Of a stretch of 64,000 nucleotides of DNA, positions 1-62,081 are shown piece by piece. Under the pieces are notes generated by a model, which was given only the letters and a program-made list of their open reading frames with translations, searched no databases and was not told where the DNA came from. Position 1 is the first letter of the stretch. Each line of letters opens with the position of its first letter. A program made the position numbers and the translations under genes. The stretch lies in the IMG/VR virus record IMGVR_UViG_3300035661_000001, positions 62,001-126,000 of that record, one strand, 5' to 3'.

Positions 1-75
1 CTATTAATCAGTTTCAATTTCATCTGGAACATTTTCCAGACGATCCTCTCAATACTTTTAAGGAGATCTAGAAAA

Positions 76-819
76 ATGTCTTTCCGAATTGTTCCGTATA
101 AAAAGGGCAGTGAAGGTGCAAAGCTGCTTGCCTTGAAGATGACCGAGATTAGTGGTAAGAAGGTTGCCGCCGGTGATCCTAGCTATGACCATCGCAACCT
201 TCTTTGGGGAACTACAAAGTATCCCTTGCTGAATTTGCAGCCAGCTGCAAGTATCGCTATTGCTCAGAACAAATTGAGCACGCTCAACAAGCTGAAACAG
301 TCTGACGTTTCTGTTCCTGAATTCACTACTCTCAGAGCAACGGCAGAGGAGTGGATTAGAAACGGCACGGTAGTCGTGGCTCGCACGCTACTGAACGCTT
401 CTGAGGGGCGTGGAATCGTTGTTTGTCGTACGGTTGAGGAACTTGTTCCGGCGCCTTTGTATGTCAAGCTGGTTACCAAGGATAAAGAATTCAGAGTTCA
501 TGCCTGTAATGGTGTGGCTATTGATTTGCAGGAGAAGCGTCGCCGTAATGGAGCGCGTAATCCTGATGGCTCACGAATTGACGGTATGATTCGCAATATC
601 GACAATAACTGGGTTTTTTGCAGGAACGGTATTGCTGAGCCCCGAGGACTGAGAGATCTGGGTATTAAAGCCGTTCAAGCCCTGGGTCTGCTGTTTGGTG
701 CAGTGGATATCATTTACAACAGCCAGACCGGGCTAATGTATGTTTTGGAAGTTAATACCGCGCCTGGATTGTGTGAAAGCACCGCGACTCGGTATGCTCA
801 GGCGTTTCTGGCGCTGTGA
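76..819 (+). CDS. ATP-grasp (RimK-like) peptide ligase, phiEco32-type
   Basis: ATP-grasp motifs: 'NKLSTL..L', 'EGRGIVV', 'KEFRVH', C-terminal 'FGAVDII...YVLEVNTAPGL'. Confidence 0.88.
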   Translation: MSFRIVPYKKGSEGAKLLALKMTEISGKKVAAGDPSYDHRNLLWGTTKYPLLNLQPAASIAIAQNKLSTLNKLKQSDVSVPEFTTLRATAEEWIRNGTVVVARTLLNASEGRGIVVCRTVEELVPAPLYVKLVTKDKEFRVHACNGVAIDLQEKRRRNGARNPDGSRIDGMIRNIDNNWVFCRNGIAEPRGLRDLGIKAVQALGLLFGAVDIIYNSQTGLMYVLEVNTAPGLCESTATRYAQAFLAL

Positions 820-893
820 GTAAATGACTCCCTGGATCTGTCCGATCCATTCATTGAGGTGACAACTCATAGGGAGTTCTAAGGAATTGTAAT

Positions 894-3077
894 ATGGACG
901 AAGACGAGGATGACATTGAACAAGTAGATGCGCCAGCACCAGCTGAGGTGCCAGCTCCAATCGCCCAACCTGCCCAGCAAGTAGTTGAGAGAGGCGGCTT
1001 TGCAGCTTTCCAAGCCGCATTGGTTGCGGCAGGCGAAGCTGCCAGAGTAGTTAATCGCAACGTCATGAATTGGGGACGTATTGAGGAAGCAGATCGGCAA
1101 GTAGATCAACTTCTTGAGGAAGAGGAACAGCTTGTCGATGAAGCTTTTCATGAAGCGGAACATCGACGTCTTCATGATATAGAAGCGGGTCAAGTTCGAC
1201 CACGAGGCATAAATTGGTTTAGAGAGCTGGCTGTTAACGGCGGTGTCTTCGGCAGAGAAATTGCACCGAGACAAGCGGTTCCACAACCTGCGCTACCAGG
1301 ACCATATGTGCCATATGTAGCGTATCAGGAACGAGTACAAGATCCAATCTTCATCAACGACGACGATATACAACGAGCAGCAGCAAGACTTAGGGAACAA
1401 TTGAATGTTCCCGATCCATTCAACGAGGAAGACCCAAGAGCGGTAGGAAATGATATGAATTACGATCAATTGGTGAGACGTTTTCCAGCTTTGACTGATC
1501 GGTATCTTCCCGATCTTTCCAACCGGAACAACGCAGCCCGAGCACTTCAGCAGTTCGATCTCGATCAGTCTGGTAATGCTGTGGAGCGTGATCTGGAGCG
1601 TAATGCCCTCACCCTTTACCTCGCCGGTCATGCTCAGGCAGCTAACATCAACTATGCTTGGTGTGCCGAATGTGAGATGATGATTGGATTTGAAAATCAT
1701 ACTCACTGTCCGTTTTGTACCTATGCCATGGTTGAGCGTGGTGAGGGTGAGGCTCGTGGATCTCATCATCGAGATGGTTGTGCCAATTGTGGCGAATGCT
1801 GTCGAGTGAAGGGTCACCAGCACTGTCCTTCTTGTGATGCCCACATGGAACGAGGTTGTCGTTATTGTGGTAAGTGCGCAGCATGTTGTGCATGTGTCCT
1901 GTGCACTGTGGCGGGTTGCCAGTACATGCAGGAATGTGAGGATTGCAAGAAGTGCTATGAACACTGCACTTGTGTGGCAGTTGCATCTTCTGATCCCACT
2001 GGCAAGATTTATCCTGCGGGGAAACCTAGCGAACGTCGACAGTTTGATTCTGAGAGACTCTCTGGTATTGAGTGGGAGTACAATCGTGCGGCTGATACAC
2101 GTGCCATGGATCACTGGTGTAAAAAGTGGCGCGGTCATATCCACCGTGACGACTCTTGTGGTTTTGAAGCAGTGAGCGCTCCGGTGGCTGGTGATTACAT
2201 GGTCCGATGTATCACCTCTCTTGGAAAGGTTCTGACTCGGGCGACGATTGATGATCGATGTTCGATTCATACCCATGTTGATGCCAAGGATCTTCAATGG
2301 ACCGATATGTTTCGATTCTTGGACCTGTACGCCAGAGTCGAGCCCATCCTGTACATGATTGCTGGACAGGAGCGACTTGATAACAGATATGCGGTTCCGA
2401 TTGGTAAGGAATACGCAGTTGCATTGAAGCGAGTTGATCGCAAAGATGCTATCATGGCAGTAGCCTTCTGCCCTCTCGAAAGAGATGGTCGTAAGCACAC
2501 TGTGACTACGATGCCTGATCACGGCAGAAACTCTCAGAGAGAGAAGCCTGGACGGCGCGCTGATAATCATCAGTATTGTCGGCGTAAGGGTCTCAACATT
2601 CTTCCTTGGTTGGCAGGACGAGGTCCCAGACCTCAGACTCCCATCAACGCTCCGGTCAAGGCTGGAGATACATTGGAGAAGTTGGCTCACCGTCACGGTG
2701 TATCAGTGGCAGCTCTGATGCGTTGGAACAAGGTCAAGCCCGGTGGTAAACTTGGTAAGACTATCGTTATCAACAAGAGAACTCTTGCACCTGACACTAC
2801 GGTGGAATTCCGAATCCATCCGAACACTCATGACCCGATTCGAGTAATCAATTGGGTTAAGATGGTGAATCAGTTGGTAGAATGGGCTGCGACGAAAACA
2901 GATAAGGATCTGGAGAGCTTGCCGAAGTCTCCGCTCCGAATTCTGTGTGAGCATGTCGTACCTGAGTGTGCTCCTTGGATCATGGCTCGGGTCAAAGAAT
3001 GGCGTAAAGAAACGGCGAGAAACATCGGGCGTCAAGCCCGCCGAATTACCATTAAGGGTGGAAAGTACGTGTACTGA
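894..3077 (+). CDS. Putative amidoligase (Amidoligase_2 / GS-like fold) with Cys-rich region and inserted LysM domain
   Basis: 'GIEWEY', 'DDSCGFEAVSAP', 'CSIHTHVDA', 'TVEFRIH' motifs; LysM-like 'VKAGDTLEKLAHRHGVSVAALMRWN' at about 2652-2775; dense CxxC tract at about 1655-1975. Confidence 0.8.
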   Translation: MDEDEDDIEQVDAPAPAEVPAPIAQPAQQVVERGGFAAFQAALVAAGEAARVVNRNVMNWGRIEEADRQVDQLLEEEEQLVDEAFHEAEHRRLHDIEAGQVRPRGINWFRELAVNGGVFGREIAPRQAVPQPALPGPYVPYVAYQERVQDPIFINDDDIQRAAARLREQLNVPDPFNEEDPRAVGNDMNYDQLVRRFPALTDRYLPDLSNRNNAARALQQFDLDQSGNAVERDLERNALTLYLAGHAQAANINYAWCAECEMMIGFENHTHCPFCTYAMVERGEGEARGSHHRDGCANCGECCRVKGHQHCPSCDAHMERGCRYCGKCAACCACVLCTVAGCQYMQECEDCKKCYEHCTCVAVASSDPTGKIYPAGKPSERRQFDSERLSGIEWEYNRAADTRAMDHWCKKWRGHIHRDDSCGFEAVSAPVAGDYMVRCITSLGKVLTRATIDDRCSIHTHVDAKDLQWTDMFRFLDLYARVEPILYMIAGQERLDNRYAVPIGKEYAVALKRVDRKDAIMAVAFCPLERDGRKHTVTTMPDHGRNSQREKPGRRADNHQYCRRKGLNILPWLAGRGPRPQTPINAPVKAGDTLEKLAHRHGVSVAALMRWNKVKPGGKLGKTIVINKRTLAPDTTVEFRIHPNTHDPIRVINWVKMVNQLVEWAATKTDKDLESLPKSPLRILCEHVVPECAPWIMARVKEWRKETARNIGRQARRITIKGGKYVY

Positions 3078-3100
3078 ATTAACTGTCAGATGAATGATTC

Positions 3101-3616
3101 TTATTGATTATGTACAGCAACGGCTTTACAAACCTCAATGAATTGTTCATCTGACAAAATTCCCTTCCCACTATTTACAGAAGTATGAAGCCATCTGAGG
3201 TTTTCAATTTTATTTGAACCGCCTTTTGATTTCGGCATGATGTGATCAATACTAGCATTCTCCCCAACAGTTAAAGATAAACCACTAAGCGCACATTTCC
3301 CATCCTGTTTCCTCCATAACTCTTGGAGCGGCTGAATGAGTGCAGTGGAACCAAAAGTAGATGCTTTTATTGACCACCAACATTTTAAACAAAGAACAGT
3401 ATCACCGATAGGTATACCTGTTGCGCAGCTTCCACAACCGCCAGAAGATACTCGAATTTTTCTTCGGACGGATTCCCATCTTCTACGTTTTTGTAAATGC
3501 ACAATACAATATGTTGTATTTTCATGACGCGGATCATTACAAGAAGAACAGCAGCCTGTTGCAAGGCGTTTTTCGCGAAGAGCTTTTTGTAATAAGTTAG
3601 TTTTTGATTTTTTCAT
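3101..3616 (-). mobile_element. HNH homing endonuclease
   Basis: 'CALSG...SIDHIMPKSKGGSNKIENLRWLHTSVN'; AT-rich, antisense insertion in a GC-richer operon. Confidence 0.85.
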
Positions 3617-3688
3617 AGTTTAACCCCATAAAGATATTCACATAACATATAACACGTTATGTGCGAGTTTGAAAGGAAATAACACATT

Positions 3689-4678
3689 ATGTGCGGGCTG
3701 AGTGGTTATATTGGTTTGAGTTCTTCTACGGAAGATAAGTTGATGTTGATCCTCGGTCTCGGGGACGGTATTGACAACCGCGGAGGTCACGCTTGTGGCT
3801 ATGCTGCCATCGCAGAGGACGGAGATTTCCGATACGCTCGAAAGAGTGGTACTTGGATTCGTTCTCGTGTCAGGTTCGTTGAGGGCGCTGCGGGTCATAT
3901 CTGTATGATGCACGCGCGTTGGGCTACTTGTGGAAATCGTGAAGATCCCATGAATGCTCACCCGTTTGCTATTCGTCGCGGTGGACGTGTAGTGATGTGG
4001 GGCGCCCATAACGGTATGGTTCCGGATGCTTTTGCTAGCGCCAAAGCTCATGGTCGTGAGGTCGCCGTTGATAGTCAGGAAATCTTTGAGCTGTTGGCAG
4101 ACAAGGATTACGAAGGTATCCGGTCTCTGGCAGGTTACGGCGTGGCGACTTGGATTGATACTGATCATCGCGATCGTGTTCATCTGTGTCGTCTCTCTAG
4201 CAATTCCGACATCTGCGTCGTCTCTGTCAAGGGTGGCGGTTTGGTGTGGGCTTCTACCTGGAAGATCCTCAAGGATGCGCTTGCGGTGGCTGATCTTGAA
4301 GTCGAGCGCGAGTTCAAGATTGATGAGATTGGTCGAGTATATCGTTTGAGCGCTGACGGCGTGCGAAAGACCAAGCTCGGCGATATCAAGGTTGGATATC
4401 GTGCTCGTGGAATGAAATCTTCGGGATACTCTAGCGGTCCCGAAGCCGCCAAAGTAAGCGACATGGAGATTGATGAGGACGCTCTCGTCGAGACCAAAAA
4501 TCCTGGCGAGAGCGAACGAACCCAAAGCACCTCGTACTCTCCTTACATGAATGAGTATCAGCATTCTAATACTCCAGTACGTACCTCCGCCCCCACTGTG
4601 ACCAGAGAAAAAGGGGATCCCAAAAAAGAGTACGAGGATATAGAAGAGTATTACCGTGGCATGGGCTGGTGTGACTGA
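3689..4678 (+). CDS. Class II (Ntn) glutamine amidotransferase
   Basis: N-terminal 'MCGLSG' (Cys nucleophile), 'RGGHACG', 'HARWAT', 'HPF', 'HNG', 'DSQ'. Confidence 0.88.
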   Translation: MCGLSGYIGLSSSTEDKLMLILGLGDGIDNRGGHACGYAAIAEDGDFRYARKSGTWIRSRVRFVEGAAGHICMMHARWATCGNREDPMNAHPFAIRRGGRVVMWGAHNGMVPDAFASAKAHGREVAVDSQEIFELLADKDYEGIRSLAGYGVATWIDTDHRDRVHLCRLSSNSDICVVSVKGGGLVWASTWKILKDALAVADLEVEREFKIDEIGRVYRLSADGVRKTKLGDIKVGYRARGMKSSGYSSGPEAAKVSDMEIDEDALVETKNPGESERTQSTSYSPYMNEYQHSNTPVRTSAPTVTREKGDPKKEYEDIEEYYRGMGWCD

Positions 4679-4704
4679 TCTTCTCTTAGAGAGCTTATCT
4701 TAAA

Positions 4705-4732
4705 TTTTGCCCGGGCGGGTCTCCGGGCAAAA
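4705..4732. terminator. Stem-loop, probable intrinsic terminator
   Basis: TTTTGCCCGG / CCGGGCAAAA inverted repeat just after the GATase stop. Confidence 0.55.
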
Positions 4733-4961
4733 CCATTTCAACCCAACAACTAACTTAAGGAGGTGGCTGGCATGATCATTGTCACTCAAAATTCCACTTA
4801 TGAATTCGATAGCGATCAAGAAAGATATCGTAAAATTAAACCTAGCATTGGAATATGGAAAACCTATCATGGTTTTCTAATGGACCCATGTATTGGTAAT
4901 AGTTTACGTATCATACGTGACGCCAATACATTGACAACTACTTCTAGAATTACTCAGATTT

Positions 4962-5165
4962 TTGGAATCGAAGATGAGTAAAAGAGTTCCTTACGAGCAA
5001 GTAGCTATTCAAATGGATCGACTTTGGAATGTTAAAATTGATCCTACTGATGAAGCGGCAATGGAGAAACATTGTGATCTACTTCGAGGATATGTAGAAG
5101 GTTGTGGTTGGGATGTAGATGATTACATTCGACGAATGATGGACTTTCCTTCGTCGAAAAATTAA
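4962..5165 (+). CDS. Hypothetical protein
   Basis: Clean short ORF in the operon flow. Confidence 0.5.
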   Translation: MESKMSKRVPYEQVAIQMDRLWNVKIDPTDEAAMEKHCDLLRGYVEGCGWDVDDYIRRMMDFPSSKN

Positions 5166-5176
5166 GGACATCATCT

Positions 5177-5635
5177 ATGGAAGATACAAAAGTTACGTGT
5201 GCGTGCGCAGACGTATACAAAACTCTCCGTTGGGAGAGCGAAAAAGTTTCAGAACGTTTCAATGCTGAGTATCAGTATTGTGATTGTTCAAATTGTAACA
5301 AATCTGTTTACGCCGGAATTTGCCGGATGGCAGACAAACTGAATCAGAATAAACGTCTGAGTGCAAAGGAACAGAAGAATATGTCGTCAAAAGATAAACT
5401 TACGGTCAGCAAAGCTATCAAGTCTCTCCACGCCAAAAATGGCAAGGGCTTGAGTCTCAAAGAGTTTGCTCGTCGTTTGGTGCGAGATGGTAATGAGCTT
5501 GCCAAGGATTGGTTTGCCAATAAGGGCGGGGCTACCGTTGAGGCTCGATCGAAGTTGAAGGAAGAGCGAATCACCGCGGAAAAGGCTGCTACTAAGAGCG
5601 CCAAGAAGTCCAGCAAATCCGGCGCGAAGAAGTGA
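5177..5635 (+). CDS. Hypothetical basic protein (Lys/Ala-rich C-terminus)
   Basis: AAGGA upstream; ends 'KAATKSAKKSSKSGAKK'. Confidence 0.55.
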   Translation: MEDTKVTCACADVYKTLRWESEKVSERFNAEYQYCDCSNCNKSVYAGICRMADKLNQNKRLSAKEQKNMSSKDKLTVSKAIKSLHAKNGKGLSLKEFARRLVRDGNELAKDWFANKGGATVEARSKLKEERITAEKAATKSAKKSSKSGAKK

Positions 5636-5664
5636 TTCTTCTTACCAAATAAAGGAAAACAGAA

Positions 5665-7083
5665 ATGTCTATCAATGTAATTGATCTGATGAATCTTTTG
5701 AAGGCTCAACCTAACGGACTCGTGGTTCGCCTTGTTACTCGTAACGTGCCTGAAATGAAGAACGCAAACGGTTGTGTGACCGCACGCGCCTATACTTTCA
5801 AGGAAGATATCTATTCTGTTCTAAATGTCTCTGACTATGGCGATGGAGAGATGTACGTTTCGTTCTTGCTATCGACCGGAGCACAGGATTGGGCTTATGT
5901 TCCGAATGATTTTCAGTTCGTTGTTTTGAATGACGAAGAGAAGAAAGAATTAGAGGCAACCTTCGAAAAGCGCCAAATGGAAAATCTTCATTCCCATTTG
6001 GTTCACTCTGGCTCGGTTGGTGCTTGGGCTGAGTTTTTCGTTGTGAACGATAAGAATGAAGTTATTCCTGGAGACCTGATTTCCAAGCGTTCGACCGGAC
6101 CTGGAAATCGTTATGGTACTATCTCTGCAAGTGGCAATGCGTCAAGTGTGGAGTTTCAGACGACCTTCAATAGCTGTTTGGCTGGAACCATTGATAGCAT
6201 GGCGTGCGGACTCAAGAGCGCGTATGATCAGGCACGGGAGAAATTCCCTACTGCCAAAATCTCTACACAGTCTGTGAAAAAACTTCCTCTGGAAGCACTC
6301 AAGGCTCTTGACGAGACGTCATTGTCATTGAAGAAATTTGATGTCAAAAACGCATATGGTTTCAAACGCAATGCTGAGGTTGACATTCCGATGCGCGCTT
6401 GCCAGACGGCTTTTCAGTTTCAGTTGAATGGCATGATTGGTCTTTCTGATGATCGAGCTAAGTCGATCACTAAGACTATTGACGCTACTCTGGGCGTCGC
6501 ATGTGTCTCGCTTCTTGCCAAGTATAACCAGCTTGATCGTGTTAAGCTGGGTGGTTTGCCTGGTGATTATCGAACTACTCCAAACCAGTTGGAATATTAT
6601 GGTTTGGGAAACACCTGGATGATGCACCCCATGTGCGCTAACCTGGTCTTTGACTTTGCGCGTAAATGCGCAGTGTTTGGAGAAAAGGGTTTTGGCAAAC
6701 ATTGGATTGCCTCTGAGGATGAGGTCGTCAGTTGTATGATGGAGCTGAATGTCGATCTCGCTCGGGAGATCATGGGTCGAAATAAGGACATCATGATAAA
6801 GATGTTCAAGGCTGCCTGGCCAATTTGTCGTGGTGATTCGGCTACTGGTGTTCCCAACCTTAGCAACGATATCAAGCCGGAGAAGGCTCAGGAATTTGTC
6901 TGGGAGGTATTCAATAACGGTATTGAATCCGTTCTGGGAGACATCTCCGAGAATATGACTTCCAATTGGACCATGGATGGCAAGTGGATCCGTCACTCGG
7001 AAGGTGATGATAAGAACGTTTGGAGAACCATCAATGCGCGGCACGGTGCGCGTAAGTTCACCAATCAGATTATCTACGGTTGA
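5665..7083 (+). CDS. Divergent phiEco32-like COOH-NH2 ligase (type 2)
   Basis: 'VGAWAEFFV' resembles GxDxEFF; 'YRTTPNQLEYYGLGNTW' resembles YR...EYRxLSNxW; context of ATP-grasp and GATase. Confidence 0.6.
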   Translation: MSINVIDLMNLLKAQPNGLVVRLVTRNVPEMKNANGCVTARAYTFKEDIYSVLNVSDYGDGEMYVSFLLSTGAQDWAYVPNDFQFVVLNDEEKKELEATFEKRQMENLHSHLVHSGSVGAWAEFFVVNDKNEVIPGDLISKRSTGPGNRYGTISASGNASSVEFQTTFNSCLAGTIDSMACGLKSAYDQAREKFPTAKISTQSVKKLPLEALKALDETSLSLKKFDVKNAYGFKRNAEVDIPMRACQTAFQFQLNGMIGLSDDRAKSITKTIDATLGVACVSLLAKYNQLDRVKLGGLPGDYRTTPNQLEYYGLGNTWMMHPMCANLVFDFARKCAVFGEKGFGKHWIASEDEVVSCMMELNVDLAREIMGRNKDIMIKMFKAAWPICRGDSATGVPNLSNDIKPEKAQEFVWEVFNNGIESVLGDISENMTSNWTMDGKWIRHSEGDDKNVWRTINARHGARKFTNQIIYG

Positions 7084-7125: not shown

Positions 7126-7824
7126 TTACCGATTCTCTTCTGTCTCAAGAAACAGTTTGGCATTTGTCAAACATAAAATATCGTTATTAAACAATGCTAG
7201 AGCCTTGTTACATTTTGAACAAAGTTCATCACGAATTTTTCTGTATTTGTAATTTTGATCTTTAAAGATAGTCTCATTAGAAGATTTATTGCAGATACGG
7301 CAAGTATTTGTATGCACATGCACATCTGTTTGTAAAGATAAATATTTCCAAGTTTCTCCGTGCTTAATAGATGAAATAGTTGATCTACTAACTTCATATA
7401 TTTTAGCAAGTTTACTTTGAGATAAAAGAGATGACTTAATCTCTAATACCTGAGTTTCTGTTAACTTAGTTATGTAATCATGGTTTCCTCTTCTTTTCTT
7501 TTCACGGTCAATAGCATTTGTTTGATGTGTACCTGTAAATAAATGATTTGGATTAACGCAAATAGGGTTATCACACGAATGACAAATGATCATCCCATCT
7601 GGAATCTTTCCTTTGTGTAATTCGTATGAATACCGATGCGCCACAGTATGCCCAAGGTCTTTGCTGATACGGAAATAACCGTAGCCATTATTGCCTTGCC
7701 GACATGCCAACCATATCCAACAATTGTTGTCATCAGATTTTTGTACTTTTTTCCAAAATCTGATCTCAGCATCTTCTGAAGTAAAAACCATGTTTATGTA
7801 ACCCCTTTCATAAACATATTTCAT
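7126..7824 (-). mobile_element. HNH homing endonuclease (HNH_3 type, with HTH and endonuclease VII-like tail)
   Basis: 'CWIW...AHRYSY...ICHSCDNPICVNPNHL..GT...N'. Confidence 0.88.
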
Positions 7825-17640: not shown

Positions 17641-18119
17641 TTTTTCAAAAGAACAGGTACAAATGAAAATCTACGAGAATGTTCAGCGGTTTGATAGCAA
17701 AACTGGTAAGCCGTATTTTGTGAAACGATTCAAGGAATTCCGTTGTGATTTTTCCGGTCAACTGATTGACGAGGATGATCTGGAGACCTATTTCTATCCA
17801 TCTTACAATCTGGATTACGAAAGCTCGGATCCCTGTTTCGGATCTTGTGGCGATGAGTATGAGTTCGGTCAGAAACATGACGTCGCTATGTTTGAATTTC
17901 TGAGCGACACCTATCATTTTCGCAATGATATCGATCCTGATGGTCATGGATTTATCGATCAATCTGTTAAAATGATGCAGCACTATCTTCCGGATAGGCT
18001 TTCGTTTGCGGAGATGTGCCGCACTAGCCGCATCGTAACCGCCGAGAAACTCATCGAAAGCGGAGAGATTGCTGCCGATCAACTGTCTCTTTAAGTATAA
18101 ATAGTTCTGATATATTAAT

Positions 18120-18191
18120 GGTTCCATCGTTCAACGGCTAGGACGGCGGCTTCTAACACTGCCTATAAGGGTTCGACTCCCTTTGGAACCA
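18120..18191 (+). tRNA. tRNA with CTA anticodon in the canonical register (possible amber suppressor; alternatively a degenerate Arg-TCT)
   Basis: Acceptor GGTTCCA/TGGAACC, D stem GTTC/GGAC, loop TTCTAAC, T arm AAGGG-TTCGACT-CCCTT. Confidence 0.7.
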
Positions 18192-18213
18192 TCCATTTAA
18201 TTTAAGGGTTTAA

Positions 18214-60600: not shown

Positions 60601-60794
60601 GGCTGATATGTCGGAAGATAGTTGGGCAGATTATGATTCAGGACCGTTTTGTCAGCATTGGTCAGAACTATATTCATGTAAAGATATTTGTGTAAAATGT
60701 GATCATTATTGTCGTGATCATGGTGAAGAAGAAGATTCCAAATGTCGTGGAAGTTTATTTTGCAAATGTAAAAAAATCGTAGATAAATAAAATT

Positions 60795-61193
60795 ATGTTT
60801 AATTCAAGCGGAATTTTAAGATTCGACCCCAAAAAAGATACTAAGCATTTTACTCCTTGGTGGTGTTTACTAGAATGTGATGAAAATATTGCTGAATATT
60901 ACGCTTGGCTTCTCAAAAGATATGGACTAGAATCTAACTCCAAAAGCTTATGGGGCGCACATATTTCTGTTATTAAGGGCGAAGATATCCCTGACCCATC
61001 CACTTGGGGTAAGCTTGAGGGCATGGAAGTTGATTTTAATTACAATCACTTAGTCCGGTTTGAAAATGGAAAACATGCTTGGGTAGATGTTTATTCAGAA
61101 GACTTATCGGCGGTTAGAGAAATGTTAGGGTTACCATTCAAACCATGGTATCATTTAACAATTGGAAGGCTGGAAAGACCTTATGAAATTTAA
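60795..61193 (+). CDS. 2H phosphoesterase-like protein
   Basis: Two HxS/T motifs: 'AHISVI' and 'YHLTIG'. Confidence 0.65.
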   Translation: MFNSSGILRFDPKKDTKHFTPWWCLLECDENIAEYYAWLLKRYGLESNSKSLWGAHISVIKGEDIPDPSTWGKLEGMEVDFNYNHLVRFENGKHAWVDVYSEDLSAVREMLGLPFKPWYHLTIGRLERPYEI

Positions 61194-61577
61194 TTCAGAA
61201 CGAGAGCTTGCTAAATTGTATCCCGATTGTATAAAGATAATTCAAAATGAAAATGAAGATCAATATTCTGGCGCTAAATTTGTAGCCGCTTCTTTTGTTA
61301 AGATTGAAGATAAAATTGATATTCATTTTGTTTATGACATCGGTTCAGATGAAAATTATCTTTGGATTTGGGGTTCTAGACATGCATCGAAAGATAATTT
61401 CTACATTGATGAATATTTTGAGCTGCCAAAAAAAGAAGCTTTAAAAGAAGTAAAAATGTATTATGAAGAGTTATATCTGTGAGTGTGCATGTCATGTTTC
61501 GCGACATGACATGTGATTCATACAAAAAATTTGCGACTCTGATATAAAGGATAATAAATAAGTATTAAGATACAAAT

Positions 61578-61649
61578 ATCTCCGTACGCATCTGGCGAGG
61601 CGGGTAGCTTGTCACGCTACTGAGGCGGGTTCGATTCCCGTCGGAGGTG
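61578..61649 (+). tRNA. tRNA-Asp(GTC)
   Basis: ATCTCCG/CGGAGGT; GTAGC-TTGTCAC-GCTAC; G73. Confidence 0.85.
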
Positions 61650-61676
61650 CTGATCCTTAAATATTGGAATAATTAA

Positions 61677-62081
61677 ATGACTGTAAAAAAAGAGATGCGT
61701 AAAATAGCTGATATTTTGGGAAAACAACAAAGAGTTTTAACAAAATTAGCTCAGCAAGTTGTAGATACTAGCGTGCCGAATAGCGATCCTCTAGGAAAAA
61801 TTATACATGATGCTACGTCTGCTTGGGCAATTCAAAATAAAATGAGTGCCAAGTCTAGTTTTGAAGCCGGTGCTGATGGAAAAAATTACGAAGCAGATGT
61901 AATATTGAATATTACAGATCCTCGTAAACCTGTAGGTAATACGCCTGCGGCGCAAGCTACTCTTGAAAATTTTAAAAGAAGCTTTACGGCATTGTTACAA
62001 TCAACGTTTGCTAGAGAAGCTCAAAATTCTTTGTCTCCATTATTTAATAGTACTGCAAGATTTAATGTTACAGTAAGATAA
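61677..62081 (+). CDS. Hypothetical protein with 'TKLAQQ' leader
   Basis: Clean ORF between tRNAs. Confidence 0.55.
   Translation: MTVKKEMRKIADILGKQQRVLTKLAQQVVDTSVPNSDPLGKIIHDATSAWAIQNKMSAKSSFEAGADGKNYEADVILNITDPRKPVGNTPAAQATLENFKRSFTALLQSTFAREAQNSLSPLFNSTARFNVTVR

What the first reader, a model, noticed from the sequence alone, without database searches (positions are those of the whole stretch)
894..3077. LysM domain inserted inside the catalytic region of a phage amidoligase
Seen: a LysM-like module (about 2652-2775, VKAGDTLEKLAHRHGVSVAALMRWN) sits between the 'KGLNI' segment and the terminal 'TVEFR' motif. A very Cys-dense tract precedes the ligase domain, and there is no signal peptide. 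Established: LysM binds GlcNAc-containing glycans such as peptidoglycan; phiEco32-type amidoligase systems have been proposed, without proof that I know of, to modify host cell-wall peptides. Inference: this fusion points to peptidoglycan precursors (lipid II or UDP-MurNAc-peptide) as the substrate, for example for superinfection exclusion or wall remodelling.
Basis: partly seen in the sequence, partly recalled or inferred. Interest (0 to 1): 0.78.

Follow-up and report, generated by a model that had tools for sequence, protein, structure and literature searches.

The report
LysM nested inside megaphage amidoligase
A giant phage from microbial mats carries a predicted ATP-dependent peptide-bond-forming enzyme with a sugar-binding LysM module spliced into its catalytic domain; this real but untested clue suggests this long-mysterious phage enzyme family may act on cell-envelope sugar precursors.

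Summary
ORF 894..3077 (+) encodes 727 aa. It has an acidic, disordered N-terminus with no signal peptide or TM segment, then a tract with 23 Cys and 8 His in 108 aa, then a glutamine-synthetase/YbdK-fold Amidoligase_2 domain. A canonical LysM is nested in that domain (aa 577-633). It passes Pfam's cut-off, is predicted as beta-alpha-alpha-beta, and matches solved peptidoglycan-binding LysMs at 35-40% identity. Comparison with 168 relatives shows a true insertion. The loop between the conserved 'LNIxPWLAGR' and 'DTTVEFR' strands is about 5 aa in most relatives, 12 aa in the nearest LysM-less kin, and 57-62 aa only in one clade of about 430-465 kb phages. At least one member of that clade has lost it. 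The gene sits in a conserved phiEco32-type cluster: an ATP-grasp enzyme, this ligase, a class II glutamine amidotransferase and a second GS-fold ligase. LysM-less relatives keep the same cluster. It is unproven and has real counter-evidence: the LysM is dispensable, a single LysM binds disaccharides poorly, LysM can bind proteins, and other family members are fused to zinc fingers. Verdict: a new variant of a known kind, of moderate interest.

The parts
76..819 (+). ATP-grasp ligase (RimK-like), first gene of the cluster
   Evidence: PHROG 2599 matches with E 5e-60. Pfam RimK, ATP-grasp_3 and Dala_Dala_lig_C match weakly. It is 54-76% identical in four related phages at the same position.
894..3077 (+). 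727-aa amidoligase gene (the finding)
894..1451 (+). Acidic, largely disordered N-terminal extension (aa 1-186). It has no Cys or Lys and no signal peptide
   Evidence: pLDDT is mostly below 50 apart from one long helix. The extension is absent from shorter homologues, which start at the equivalent of M188.
1452..1655 (+). Small conserved helical domain (aa 187-254, 'DRYxPDLS...NA..AL')
   Evidence: pLDDT is 90-96. It is conserved in close relatives. It has no Pfam match.
1656..1979 (+). Cys/His-rich tract (aa 255-362; 23 Cys, 8 His), probably a metal-binding array
   Evidence: One search gives the counts. Twenty Cys are nearly invariant in 30 homologues. It has no Pfam hit. There are only weak ESM-Atlas leads to LIM and double zinc ribbon. 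It contains CxxCxxCxxxC-type spacings, and the metal is unknown.
2034..2621 (+). Amidoligase_2 / GS-fold catalytic domain, N-terminal part (aa 381-576). It holds the invariant residues E393, E395, D419, S421, C422, G423, E425, H459, H461, E483, R563 and N568
   Evidence: Pfam PF12224 covers aa 421-528. VIA-align gives Z 12.5 to YbdK 1tt4/1r8g and about 12 to glutamine synthetases.
2622..2792 (+). Inserted segment (aa 577-633): a Pro-rich linker 'GPRPxTP', the LysM core (aa 584-626, nt 2643-2771) and the tail 'NKRTLAP'
   Evidence: The insert's pI is 11.6.
2793..3074 (+). Catalytic domain, C-terminal part (aa 634-727). It holds the invariant residues D634, T636, E638, F639 and R640 ('DTTVEFR') and terminal helices
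   Evidence: LysM-less kin align to Pfam profile positions up to 245 here.
3101..3616 (-). HNH homing endonuclease inserted between the amidoligase and GATase genes. It is not part of the pathway
   Evidence: Pfam HNH_5 and HNH match. It is absent in relatives, where the two genes abut. One low-depth contig skips 3075 to 3729.
3689..4678 (+). Class II (Ntn) glutamine amidotransferase with an invariant Cys2 nucleophile
   Evidence: Pfam GATase_6 matches with E 1.6e-8 and PHROG 14519 with E 3e-19. M1-C2-G3 are invariant in 5 orthologues.
5665..7083 (+). Second GS/GCL/PafA-fold carboxylate-amine ligase, a divergent phiEco32-like COOH-NH2 ligase type 2
   Evidence: The direct Pfam match is only E 0.08 and PHROG 3815 gives 5e-4. 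Homologues at E 1e-32 to 1e-52 carry PF14395. The AlphaFold2 model has pLDDT 85.6 and pTM 0.84. VIA-align gives Z 15.0 to the GshF GCL domain and 14-15 to Dop, PafA and YbdK.
7126..7824 (-). Second homing endonuclease (HNH_3 plus an Endonuclease VII-like part), which bounds the cluster

Best explanation
What is shown. The gene encodes a cytoplasmic protein whose catalytic domain has the GS/YbdK fold and keeps every invariant acidic, His and Arg position of its family, which fits an active ATP-dependent carboxylate-amine ligase (the activity itself is inferred, not assayed). It works within a conserved four-enzyme cluster: an ATP-grasp ligase, this ligase, a class II glutamine amidotransferase and a second GS-fold ligase. 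A complete LysM domain was captured into a naturally variable beta-hairpin loop. That loop connects the strand carrying R563/N568 to the strand carrying E638/R640.

What is inferred. E638/R640 probably correspond to the metal-binding Glu and phosphate-binding Arg of glutamine synthetase and glutamate-cysteine ligase. LysM has its two ends side by side, so it fits into a hairpin without disturbing the fold. I take the LysM to be an added ligand-docking module. It would hold a GlcNAc/MurNAc-bearing envelope precursor at the cytoplasmic face of the membrane close to the active-site entrance. The precursor could be lipid II or a related peptidoglycan precursor, or another undecaprenyl-linked or nascent GlcNAc glycan. 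The cluster would then amidate a carboxylate of that precursor or add amino acids to it, with the amidotransferase supplying ammonia or trimming. LysM-less relatives would perform the same chemistry with lower or differently achieved substrate affinity.
For: - LysM identity and fold are supported.
- The insertion lies inside the Pfam domain, between invariant motifs.
- The loop is an insertion hot spot in the family: about 5 aa by default, with unrelated 20-44 aa inserts elsewhere.
- The LysM is retained and Pfam-recognisable in all 14 diverged clade members. Insert identity is 39-83% against 54-87% for the core. It keeps the GDT[LI]...WN...G-x-x-[LI] signature and a uniformly basic pI of 10.2-12.0, which suits anionic pyrophosphate-linked ligands.
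- The AtlA contact residues G11, D12, T13, L14 and K16 are conserved.
- GS/YbdK fold is supported at Z 12.5, and the catalytic-type residues are invariant.
- The cluster partners are intact and syntenic.
- The cytosolic SpoVID LysM binds lipid II (PMC11513918).
- The cell-wall hypothesis for this system is in the literature.
- From my own knowledge, not tested here: ligase-plus-amidotransferase pairs such as MurT/GatD amidate lipid II stem peptides.
Against: - The LysM is confined to one small clade and was lost at least once (P0013 nests inside the clade with support 95/80; P0015 also lacks it). The cluster stays the same in these cases.
- A single AtlA LysM needs four or more sugars and does not bind disaccharide-peptides.
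- The alpha2-beta2 loop half of the binding groove (AtlA G36, L38, F40) is diverged and one residue shorter in this protein.
- LysM can serve protein-protein or intramolecular roles.
- Other members of the family are fused to zinc fingers, YEATS, or GNAT plus DAM-like domains. This protein has its own conserved Cys-rich domain, which suggests protein or nucleic-acid recognition.
- I could not measure where the LysM groove points relative to the active site, because model coordinates are not exposed.
- The host is unknown.
Confidence: 0.4

Rival explanations
1. The LysM has been co-opted as a protein-binding, oligomerisation or lid module and does not bind glycan. The ligase substrate would be a peptide, a protein or a small metabolite, for example a gamma-glutamyl-type peptide or tag. 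This is the substrate type originally proposed for these GS-like/ATP-grasp systems, and it would be the same as in LysM-less relatives.
For: - LysM-less orthologues keep the same cluster and the same invariant residues.
- The LysM has been secondarily lost.
- The SpoVID LysM binds SpoIVA and SpoVK, and the Kbp LysM pairs with its BON domain.
- The family has zinc-finger, YEATS and GNAT fusions, and this protein has a conserved Cys-rich domain.
- Both GS-fold ligases resemble the protein-tagging enzymes PafA and Dop as well as they resemble YbdK.
- The genome also carries a GGACT gamma-glutamyl cyclotransferase next to two further COOH-NH2 ligase paralogues.
- Linker pLDDT of 80-89 suggests a fixed packing of the LysM on the catalytic domain.
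Against: - The LysM shares an unusually high 35-40% identity with bona fide peptidoglycan-binding LysMs, and its GDTL motif is intact.
- No partner protein has been identified.
- Basic LysMs are typical of glycan binders (my own knowledge).
Confidence: 0.35
2. The LysM is a nearly neutral passenger. It was captured by chance into a loop that tolerates insertions, and it contributes nothing essential.
For: The loop accepts many unrelated inserts. The LysM was lost without disrupting the gene or cluster. The insert evolves somewhat faster than the core.
Against: It is retained as a recognisable, Pfam-significant LysM across 14 members that have diverged to 39% insert identity, with conserved linkers on both sides. 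No decayed or truncated versions were seen apart from complete absence.
Confidence: 0.12
3. The protein acts outside the cytoplasm, either packaged in the virion or released at lysis, and uses the LysM to bind mature peptidoglycan.
For: LysM classically binds polymeric peptidoglycan. Large phages can package enzymes (my own knowledge).
Against: There is no signal peptide or TM segment. The GS-fold chemistry requires ATP. The gene is embedded among cytoplasmic enzymes (ATP-grasp, amidotransferase) rather than structural genes.
Confidence: 0.05
4. The architecture is an artefact, such as a chimeric assembly, a frameshift fusion or a chance LysM-like motif.
For: None was found.
Against: Identical single contigs occur in three runs. 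Fourteen homologues from separate samples carry the same nested LysM. The Pfam, PDB sequence and structure matches are all significant.
Confidence: 0.01

Closest known systems
Phage Amidoligase_2 (PF12224) enzymes of the phiEco32-type cluster (Iyer, Abhiman, Burroughs & Aravind 2009)
   Same: It shares the GS-like catalytic domain, which passes the Pfam cut-off. It has the same partners: a RimK-like ATP-grasp, a class II glutamine amidotransferase and a COOH-NH2 ligase type 2. Structurally it matches amidoligases of Cronobacter, Cellulophaga, Pseudomonas, Arthrobacter and crAss-like phages.
   Different: It is only 8-17% identical to those named phage proteins. It carries a nested LysM, a 108-aa Cys-rich domain and a roughly 190-aa acidic extension. 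It lies in a 452-kb genome that also has two extra COOH-NH2 ligase paralogues and a GGACT gene. No ESM-Atlas cluster of 50 or more members combines LysM with Amidoligase_2.
YbdK/GCS2 carboxylate-amine ligases, glutamate-cysteine ligase, glutamine synthetase, and PafA/Dop
   Same: It shares the fold (Z 10.5-12.5 over model residues 381-715). Invariant Glu, His and Arg residues sit on the equivalent strands.
   Different: There is no sequence-level membership: no Pfam GCS2 or Gln-synt hit, and 9-14% identity. The substrate is unknown. None of these families is known to me to have a nested carbohydrate-binding module.
Peptidoglycan-binding LysM domains (E. faecalis AtlA 2mkx, T. thermophilus NlpC/P60 4uz2/4uz3, E. 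coli MltD 1e0g)
   Same: It has the beta-alpha-alpha-beta fold, 33-40% identity, and the GDTL and WN signature residues.
   Different: Here there is a single copy, it is cytoplasmic, and it is inserted inside an enzyme domain rather than appended in tandem to a secreted hydrolase. The alpha2-beta2 loop is diverged.
B. subtilis SpoVID cytosolic LysM
   Same: It is a LysM in a protein without a signal peptide that acts in the cytosol. SpoVID's LysM binds lipid II (PMC11513918).
   Different: The SpoVID LysM is acidic (pI 4.8), C-terminal, regulatory, and also binds proteins. Here the LysM is strongly basic (pI 10-12) and nested in a ligase.
MurT/GatD and AsnB1/LtsA peptidoglycan stem-peptide amidation (from my own knowledge)
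   Same: These pair an ATP-dependent ligase with a glutamine amidotransferase that acts on a carboxylate of a cytoplasmic peptidoglycan precursor. This is the chemistry proposed here.
   Different: The folds differ: MurT has a Mur-ligase fold and GatD is a class I amidotransferase. This is an analogy only, with no homology shown.

Membership tests
LysM (PF01476) | Profile match above the curated cut-off | tested here: met
   The match scores 32.7 bits against a cut-off of 20.9 and 37.2 bits in the genome scan. The clade members P0005 and P0014 also pass.
LysM (PF01476) | Beta-alpha-alpha-beta fold that superposes on solved LysM domains | tested here: met
   Foldseek gives probability 1.0, TM 0.67-0.74 and rmsd 1.5-3.1 A to 2mkx, 4uz3 and 1e0g.
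LysM (PF01476) | Binding of GlcNAc-containing glycans | not testable with these tools
   Only residue conservation could be checked. The equivalents of AtlA G11, D12, T13, L14 and K16 are conserved. The equivalents of G36, L38 and F40 are not.
Amidoligase_2 (PF12224) | Profile match above the curated cut-off | tested here: met
   The match scores 28.8 bits against a cut-off of 22, but covers only profile positions 73-186 because the LysM breaks the match. LysM-less homologues cover profile positions 71-245.
Amidoligase_2 (PF12224) | Glutamine-synthetase-like fold with conserved acidic, His and Arg active-site residues | tested here: met
   VIA-align gives Z 12.5 to YbdK and about 12 to GS. E393, E395, E425, H459, H461, E483, R563, N568, E638 and R640 are invariant in 30 sequences. 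Their assignment to metal or phosphate ligands rests on my recollection of GS and GCL and was not tested.
Amidoligase_2 (PF12224) | ATP-dependent amide-bond formation | not testable with these tools
   No biochemical characterisation of any member was found in the papers I searched.
phiEco32-type amidoligase cluster | Co-located ATP-grasp, Amidoligase_2, class II GATase and COOH-NH2 ligase type 2 | tested here: met
   All four are within 76..7083 on one strand. The same order is found in four related phage contigs.
COOH-NH2_lig type 2 (PF14395), for ORF 5665..7083 | Profile match above the curated cut-off | tested here: not met
   The direct match scores 12.6 bits against a cut-off of 25. Membership rests on transitive homology and on fold (Z 15), so I file it as a divergent relative.
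YbdK/GCS2 family | Sequence-level membership in Pfam GCS2 | tested here: not met
   No GCS2 hit appeared at E up to 0.1. The similarity is in fold only. It works like this family but is not a member.
Zinc-finger / LIM-type domain, for aa 255-362 | Profile match or confident structural match | tested here: inconclusive
   There was no Pfam hit even at E 10. ESM-Atlas feature scores of 0.75-0.79 to LIM clusters and TM of 0.31 or less to double zinc ribbons are leads only. pLDDT ranges from 51 to 95.

The most novel reading that the evidence does not exclude
A lineage of roughly 450-kb phages edits a host cell-envelope precursor from the cytoplasmic side. A LysM spliced next to the active site of a GS-fold ligase would capture lipid II or another undecaprenyl-linked GlcNAc glycan. 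The ATP-grasp, GATase and second-ligase partners would then amidate its carboxylates or extend them with amino acids. If true, this would reveal by 'Rosetta-stone' logic the long-unknown substrate class of the widespread phiEco32-type phage amidoligase systems.
Probability: 0.25. Interest if true: 0.8.

Novelty: new variant of a known kind. Interest (0 to 1): 0.5.

Why it matters
Amidoligase_2/GATase clusters are common in phages, from phiEco32-like podoviruses to crAss-like and giant phages. I found no experimentally defined substrate for them in the papers I searched. A ligand-binding domain nested beside the catalytic strand is one of the few sequence-level clues to what these enzymes act on. 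It also yields concrete and inexpensive experiments: glycan or lipid II binding, activity with and without the LysM, and a natural LysM-less orthologue as a control. If the glycan reading is right, it would show phage-directed chemical editing of wall or surface-glycan precursors, which bears on superinfection exclusion and receptor masking. If it is wrong, it adds an example of LysM reuse as a non-glycan module inside an enzyme.

Tried and rejected
- Megablast of the gene against 50,697 phage records found nothing. tblastn found only a 27%-identical 'putative amidoligase' in two Caudoviricetes sp. records.
- Iyer et al. 2009 is not held, so its proposal is cited second-hand.
- Pfam scans of the Cys-rich tract, the helical domain and the N-terminal extension gave nothing at E up to 10.
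- hhalign between the two GS-fold ligase families gave no signal, with probability 0.1%.
- A profile of the 472-aa protein family against PDB sequences gave nothing meaningful.
- DUF7275/DUF7277, the conserved upstream neighbour in relatives, was not found in this genome, and the control genomes did not ring either.
- An HMM built from the inserts finds the LysM nowhere else among 169 family proteins.
- The 467-aa antisense ORF 1293..2696 has no support, and I treated it as chance.
- I considered assembly chimera and rejected it.
- I could not measure the distance or orientation of the LysM groove relative to the catalytic residues, because the prediction tool returns no coordinates. The key structural question therefore stays open.
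- I did not attempt host assignment beyond the sample type, which is microbial mat and sediment metagenomes.
Full report
**1. What is there**

The window is bases 62001-126000 of a 451,956-bp virus record with direct terminal repeats. The sequence is found in microbial-mat and sediment metagenomes.

ORF 894..3077 (+) encodes 727 aa and has an AAGGA ribosome-binding-like site upstream. Pfam gives two significant hits:
- LysM PF01476 at aa 588-616, with E 7e-8 and 32.7 bits against a cut-off of 20.9.
- Amidoligase_2 PF12224 at aa 421-528, which covers only profile positions 73-186 of 245.

PHROGs label the protein 'amidoligase enzyme'. The best sequence matches among solved structures are LysM domains of peptidoglycan hydrolases: 4uz2, 2mkx and 1e0g.

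The N-terminus is acidic and there is no TM-like stretch. Residues 255-362 hold 23 Cys and 8 His.

**2. The LysM is a genuine nested insertion**

An AlphaFold2 model built on 30 homologues has pLDDT above 85 for aa 190-300 and 380-727. It shows a beta-alpha-alpha-beta unit at aa 584-626.

- Foldseek matches that unit to solved LysMs at probability 1.0, TM up to 0.74 and 33-40% identity.
- It matches the rest of the model (aa 386-715) to YbdK/GCS2, plant glutamate-cysteine ligase, Dop and glutamine synthetases.
- VIA-align gives Z 12.5 for YbdK and about 12 for GS.

A word-index search found 30 homologues, and an exhaustive HMMER search found 2,526 representatives at E up to 1e-3. Most of these align in two stretches that break at about query position 327 of the 478-residue query (residues 250-727), that is about protein residue 577, where the LysM begins.

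I measured the loop between the motifs 'LNIxPWLAGR' and 'DTTVEFR':
- It is about 5 aa in most proteins.
- It is 12 aa in the nearest LysM-less relatives.
- It is 57-62 aa in P0001-P0012, P0014 and P0031.
- Unrelated 20-44 aa inserts occur in a few other proteins.

An HMM built from the inserts finds LysM only in that one clade. In LysM-less homologues the Pfam Amidoligase_2 match runs across the site to profile positions 239-245. In LysM-bearing homologues it stops at positions 176-197. The insertion therefore lies inside the catalytic domain, between strands that carry the invariant residues R563/N568 and E638/R640.

My recollection of the GS and GCL active sites is that the 'E-x-R' strand supplies a metal ligand and a phosphate-binding Arg. 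That assignment is an inference and was not tested here.

**3. Evolution of the insertion**

I built a maximum-likelihood tree of the catalytic cores with the insert removed. It places all LysM-bearing proteins in one clade with support 100/98. That clade also contains two LysM-less members. One of them, P0013, nests deep inside it with support 95/80. The minimum history is two changes, most simply one gain followed by loss.

The 12-aa loop of LysM-less kin ('...V-x-x-K-R/K-x-x-A-P') resembles the C-terminal tail of the insert ('...NKRTLAP'). This suggests the LysM entered at the N-terminal side of an ancestral 12-aa loop.

Across the clade the insert is 39-83% identical to the query's, against 54-87% for the core. 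It is uniformly very basic, with pI 10.2-12.0. This genome contains no other LysM and no other Amidoligase_2.

**4. Genomic context**

The gene sits in a same-strand cluster:
- An ATP-grasp ligase at 76..819 (PHROG 2599, E 5e-60).
- The amidoligase.
- A class II glutamine amidotransferase at 3689..4678, with an invariant Cys2.
- A 472-aa protein at 5665..7083.

The 472-aa protein's direct Pfam match to COOH-NH2_lig type 2 is sub-threshold. However, its homologues carry PF14395, and its confident model (pLDDT 85.6) matches the GshF GCL domain, Dop, PafA and YbdK at Z 14-15.

The same gene order recurs in related contigs of about 430-465 kb and in LysM-less relatives. Two HNH homing-endonuclease genes on the opposite strand interrupt the cluster only in this genome.

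About 33 kb upstream, outside the window, lie two more COOH-NH2_lig paralogues followed by a GGACT gamma-glutamyl cyclotransferase.

**5. Interpretation**

This much is shown:
- The protein has no signal peptide or TM segment, so it is presumably cytoplasmic.
- It has a GS-fold ligase domain with all family-invariant residues in place.
- A LysM is nested in a variable hairpin beside a catalytic strand.
- It sits inside a phiEco32-type cluster.

What the LysM binds is an inference.

Points for a glycan or peptidoglycan-precursor ligand:
- The LysM is unusually close to bona fide peptidoglycan-binding domains.
- It keeps the equivalents of AtlA G11, D12, T13, L14 and K16.
- The cytosolic SpoVID LysM sequesters lipid II.
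- The literature already speculates about cell-wall modification by these systems.

Points against:
- The LysM is dispensable, and the same cluster exists without it.
- A single AtlA LysM needs about four sugars and ignores disaccharide-peptides.
- LysMs can bind proteins or partner domains.
- Other Amidoligase_2 proteins are fused to LIM, SWIM and RanBP zinc fingers, YEATS, or GNAT plus DAM-like modules.
- This protein has its own conserved Cys-rich, probably metal-binding, domain of unknown fold.

My estimates are:
- About 0.4 for the glycan-docking model, with lipid II or another cytoplasm-facing GlcNAc glycan as ligand.
- About 0.35 for a non-glycan protein-binding or lid role.
- About 0.12 for a near-neutral passenger.
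- About 0.05 for an extracytoplasmic role.

**6. Novelty**

No paper in the library links LysM with an amidoligase. No ESM-Atlas cluster of 50 or more members combines the two Pfam families. A JGI automatic annotation of one homologue already reads 'LysM domain/Putative amidoligase enzyme', so the co-occurrence has been machine-labelled. I found no published discussion of it. I rate this a new variant of a known kind. Its interest is moderate, because it is a testable clue to a family with no known substrate, but it is confined to an uncultured phage clade and is not decisive.

**7. Limits**

The geometric relation between the LysM groove and the active site, which is the single most informative computational test, could not be measured.
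- The bootstrap for the tree had not fully converged.
- The metal bound by the Cys-rich tract and the identity of the host are unknown.

Noticed in passing
window 18119-18195 (+), and 15 further tRNAs between 21561 and 62832: The window has an array of 16 tRNA genes. One has anticodon CTA, an amber-suppressor type that ARAGORN labels Pyl. This may hint at TAG read-through or recoding in part of this giant phage's genes.
   Followed up: no
window 3101-3616 (-) and 7126-7824 (-): Two HNH-family homing endonuclease genes lie on the opposite strand inside and at the end of the amidoligase cluster. Relatives L007 and L008 lack the first one, and their amidoligase and GATase genes abut. A low-depth contig in one run skips 3075 to 3729. 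The second gene combines HNH_3 with an Endonuclease VII-like C-terminus.
   Followed up: partly
outside the window: G000 about 28.5-32.8 kb (L049 6543-8093, 8220-9719, 9844-10818): Two tandem COOH-NH2 ligase type 2 paralogues (Pfam E 8e-15 and 3e-13) are followed by a GGACT/AIG2-like gamma-glutamyl cyclotransferase (E 3e-16). The genome therefore holds three type-2 ligases. This suggests gamma-glutamyl-type linkages are made and cleaved.
   Followed up: partly
L004 239-1210 (G000 60739-61710), just upstream of the window: This 323-aa ORF has a signal-peptide-like N-terminus and a C-terminal '...DLYF', which looks like an outer-membrane beta-barrel. It has no Pfam hit. It occupies the position where related phages carry a DUF7277/DUF7275 protein.
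   Followed up: partly
window 1-6000 compared with the rest: The amidoligase cluster is richer in G+C (0.45-0.49) than most of the window (0.30-0.41).
   Followed up: no
window 1293-2696 (-): A 467-aa antisense ORF lies inside the amidoligase gene. It has no homology support, and I took it as a by-product of codon composition.
   Followed up: no
window 1656-1979 (aa 255-362): The Cys tract contains two CxxCxxCxxxC spacings (C322-C332 and C348-C358) of the kind seen in 4Fe-4S ferredoxins, as well as zinc-ribbon-like CxxC...HxHCxxC pairs. The metal could be Fe-S rather than Zn.
   Followed up: no
relatives L001 13060-14583 and L002 11420-12892: In the LysM-less relatives, the roughly 500-aa gene at the position of the second ligase is only 17-18% identical to the window's 472-aa protein. 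Orthology of that fourth component across the whole lineage is therefore uncertain.
   Followed up: partly
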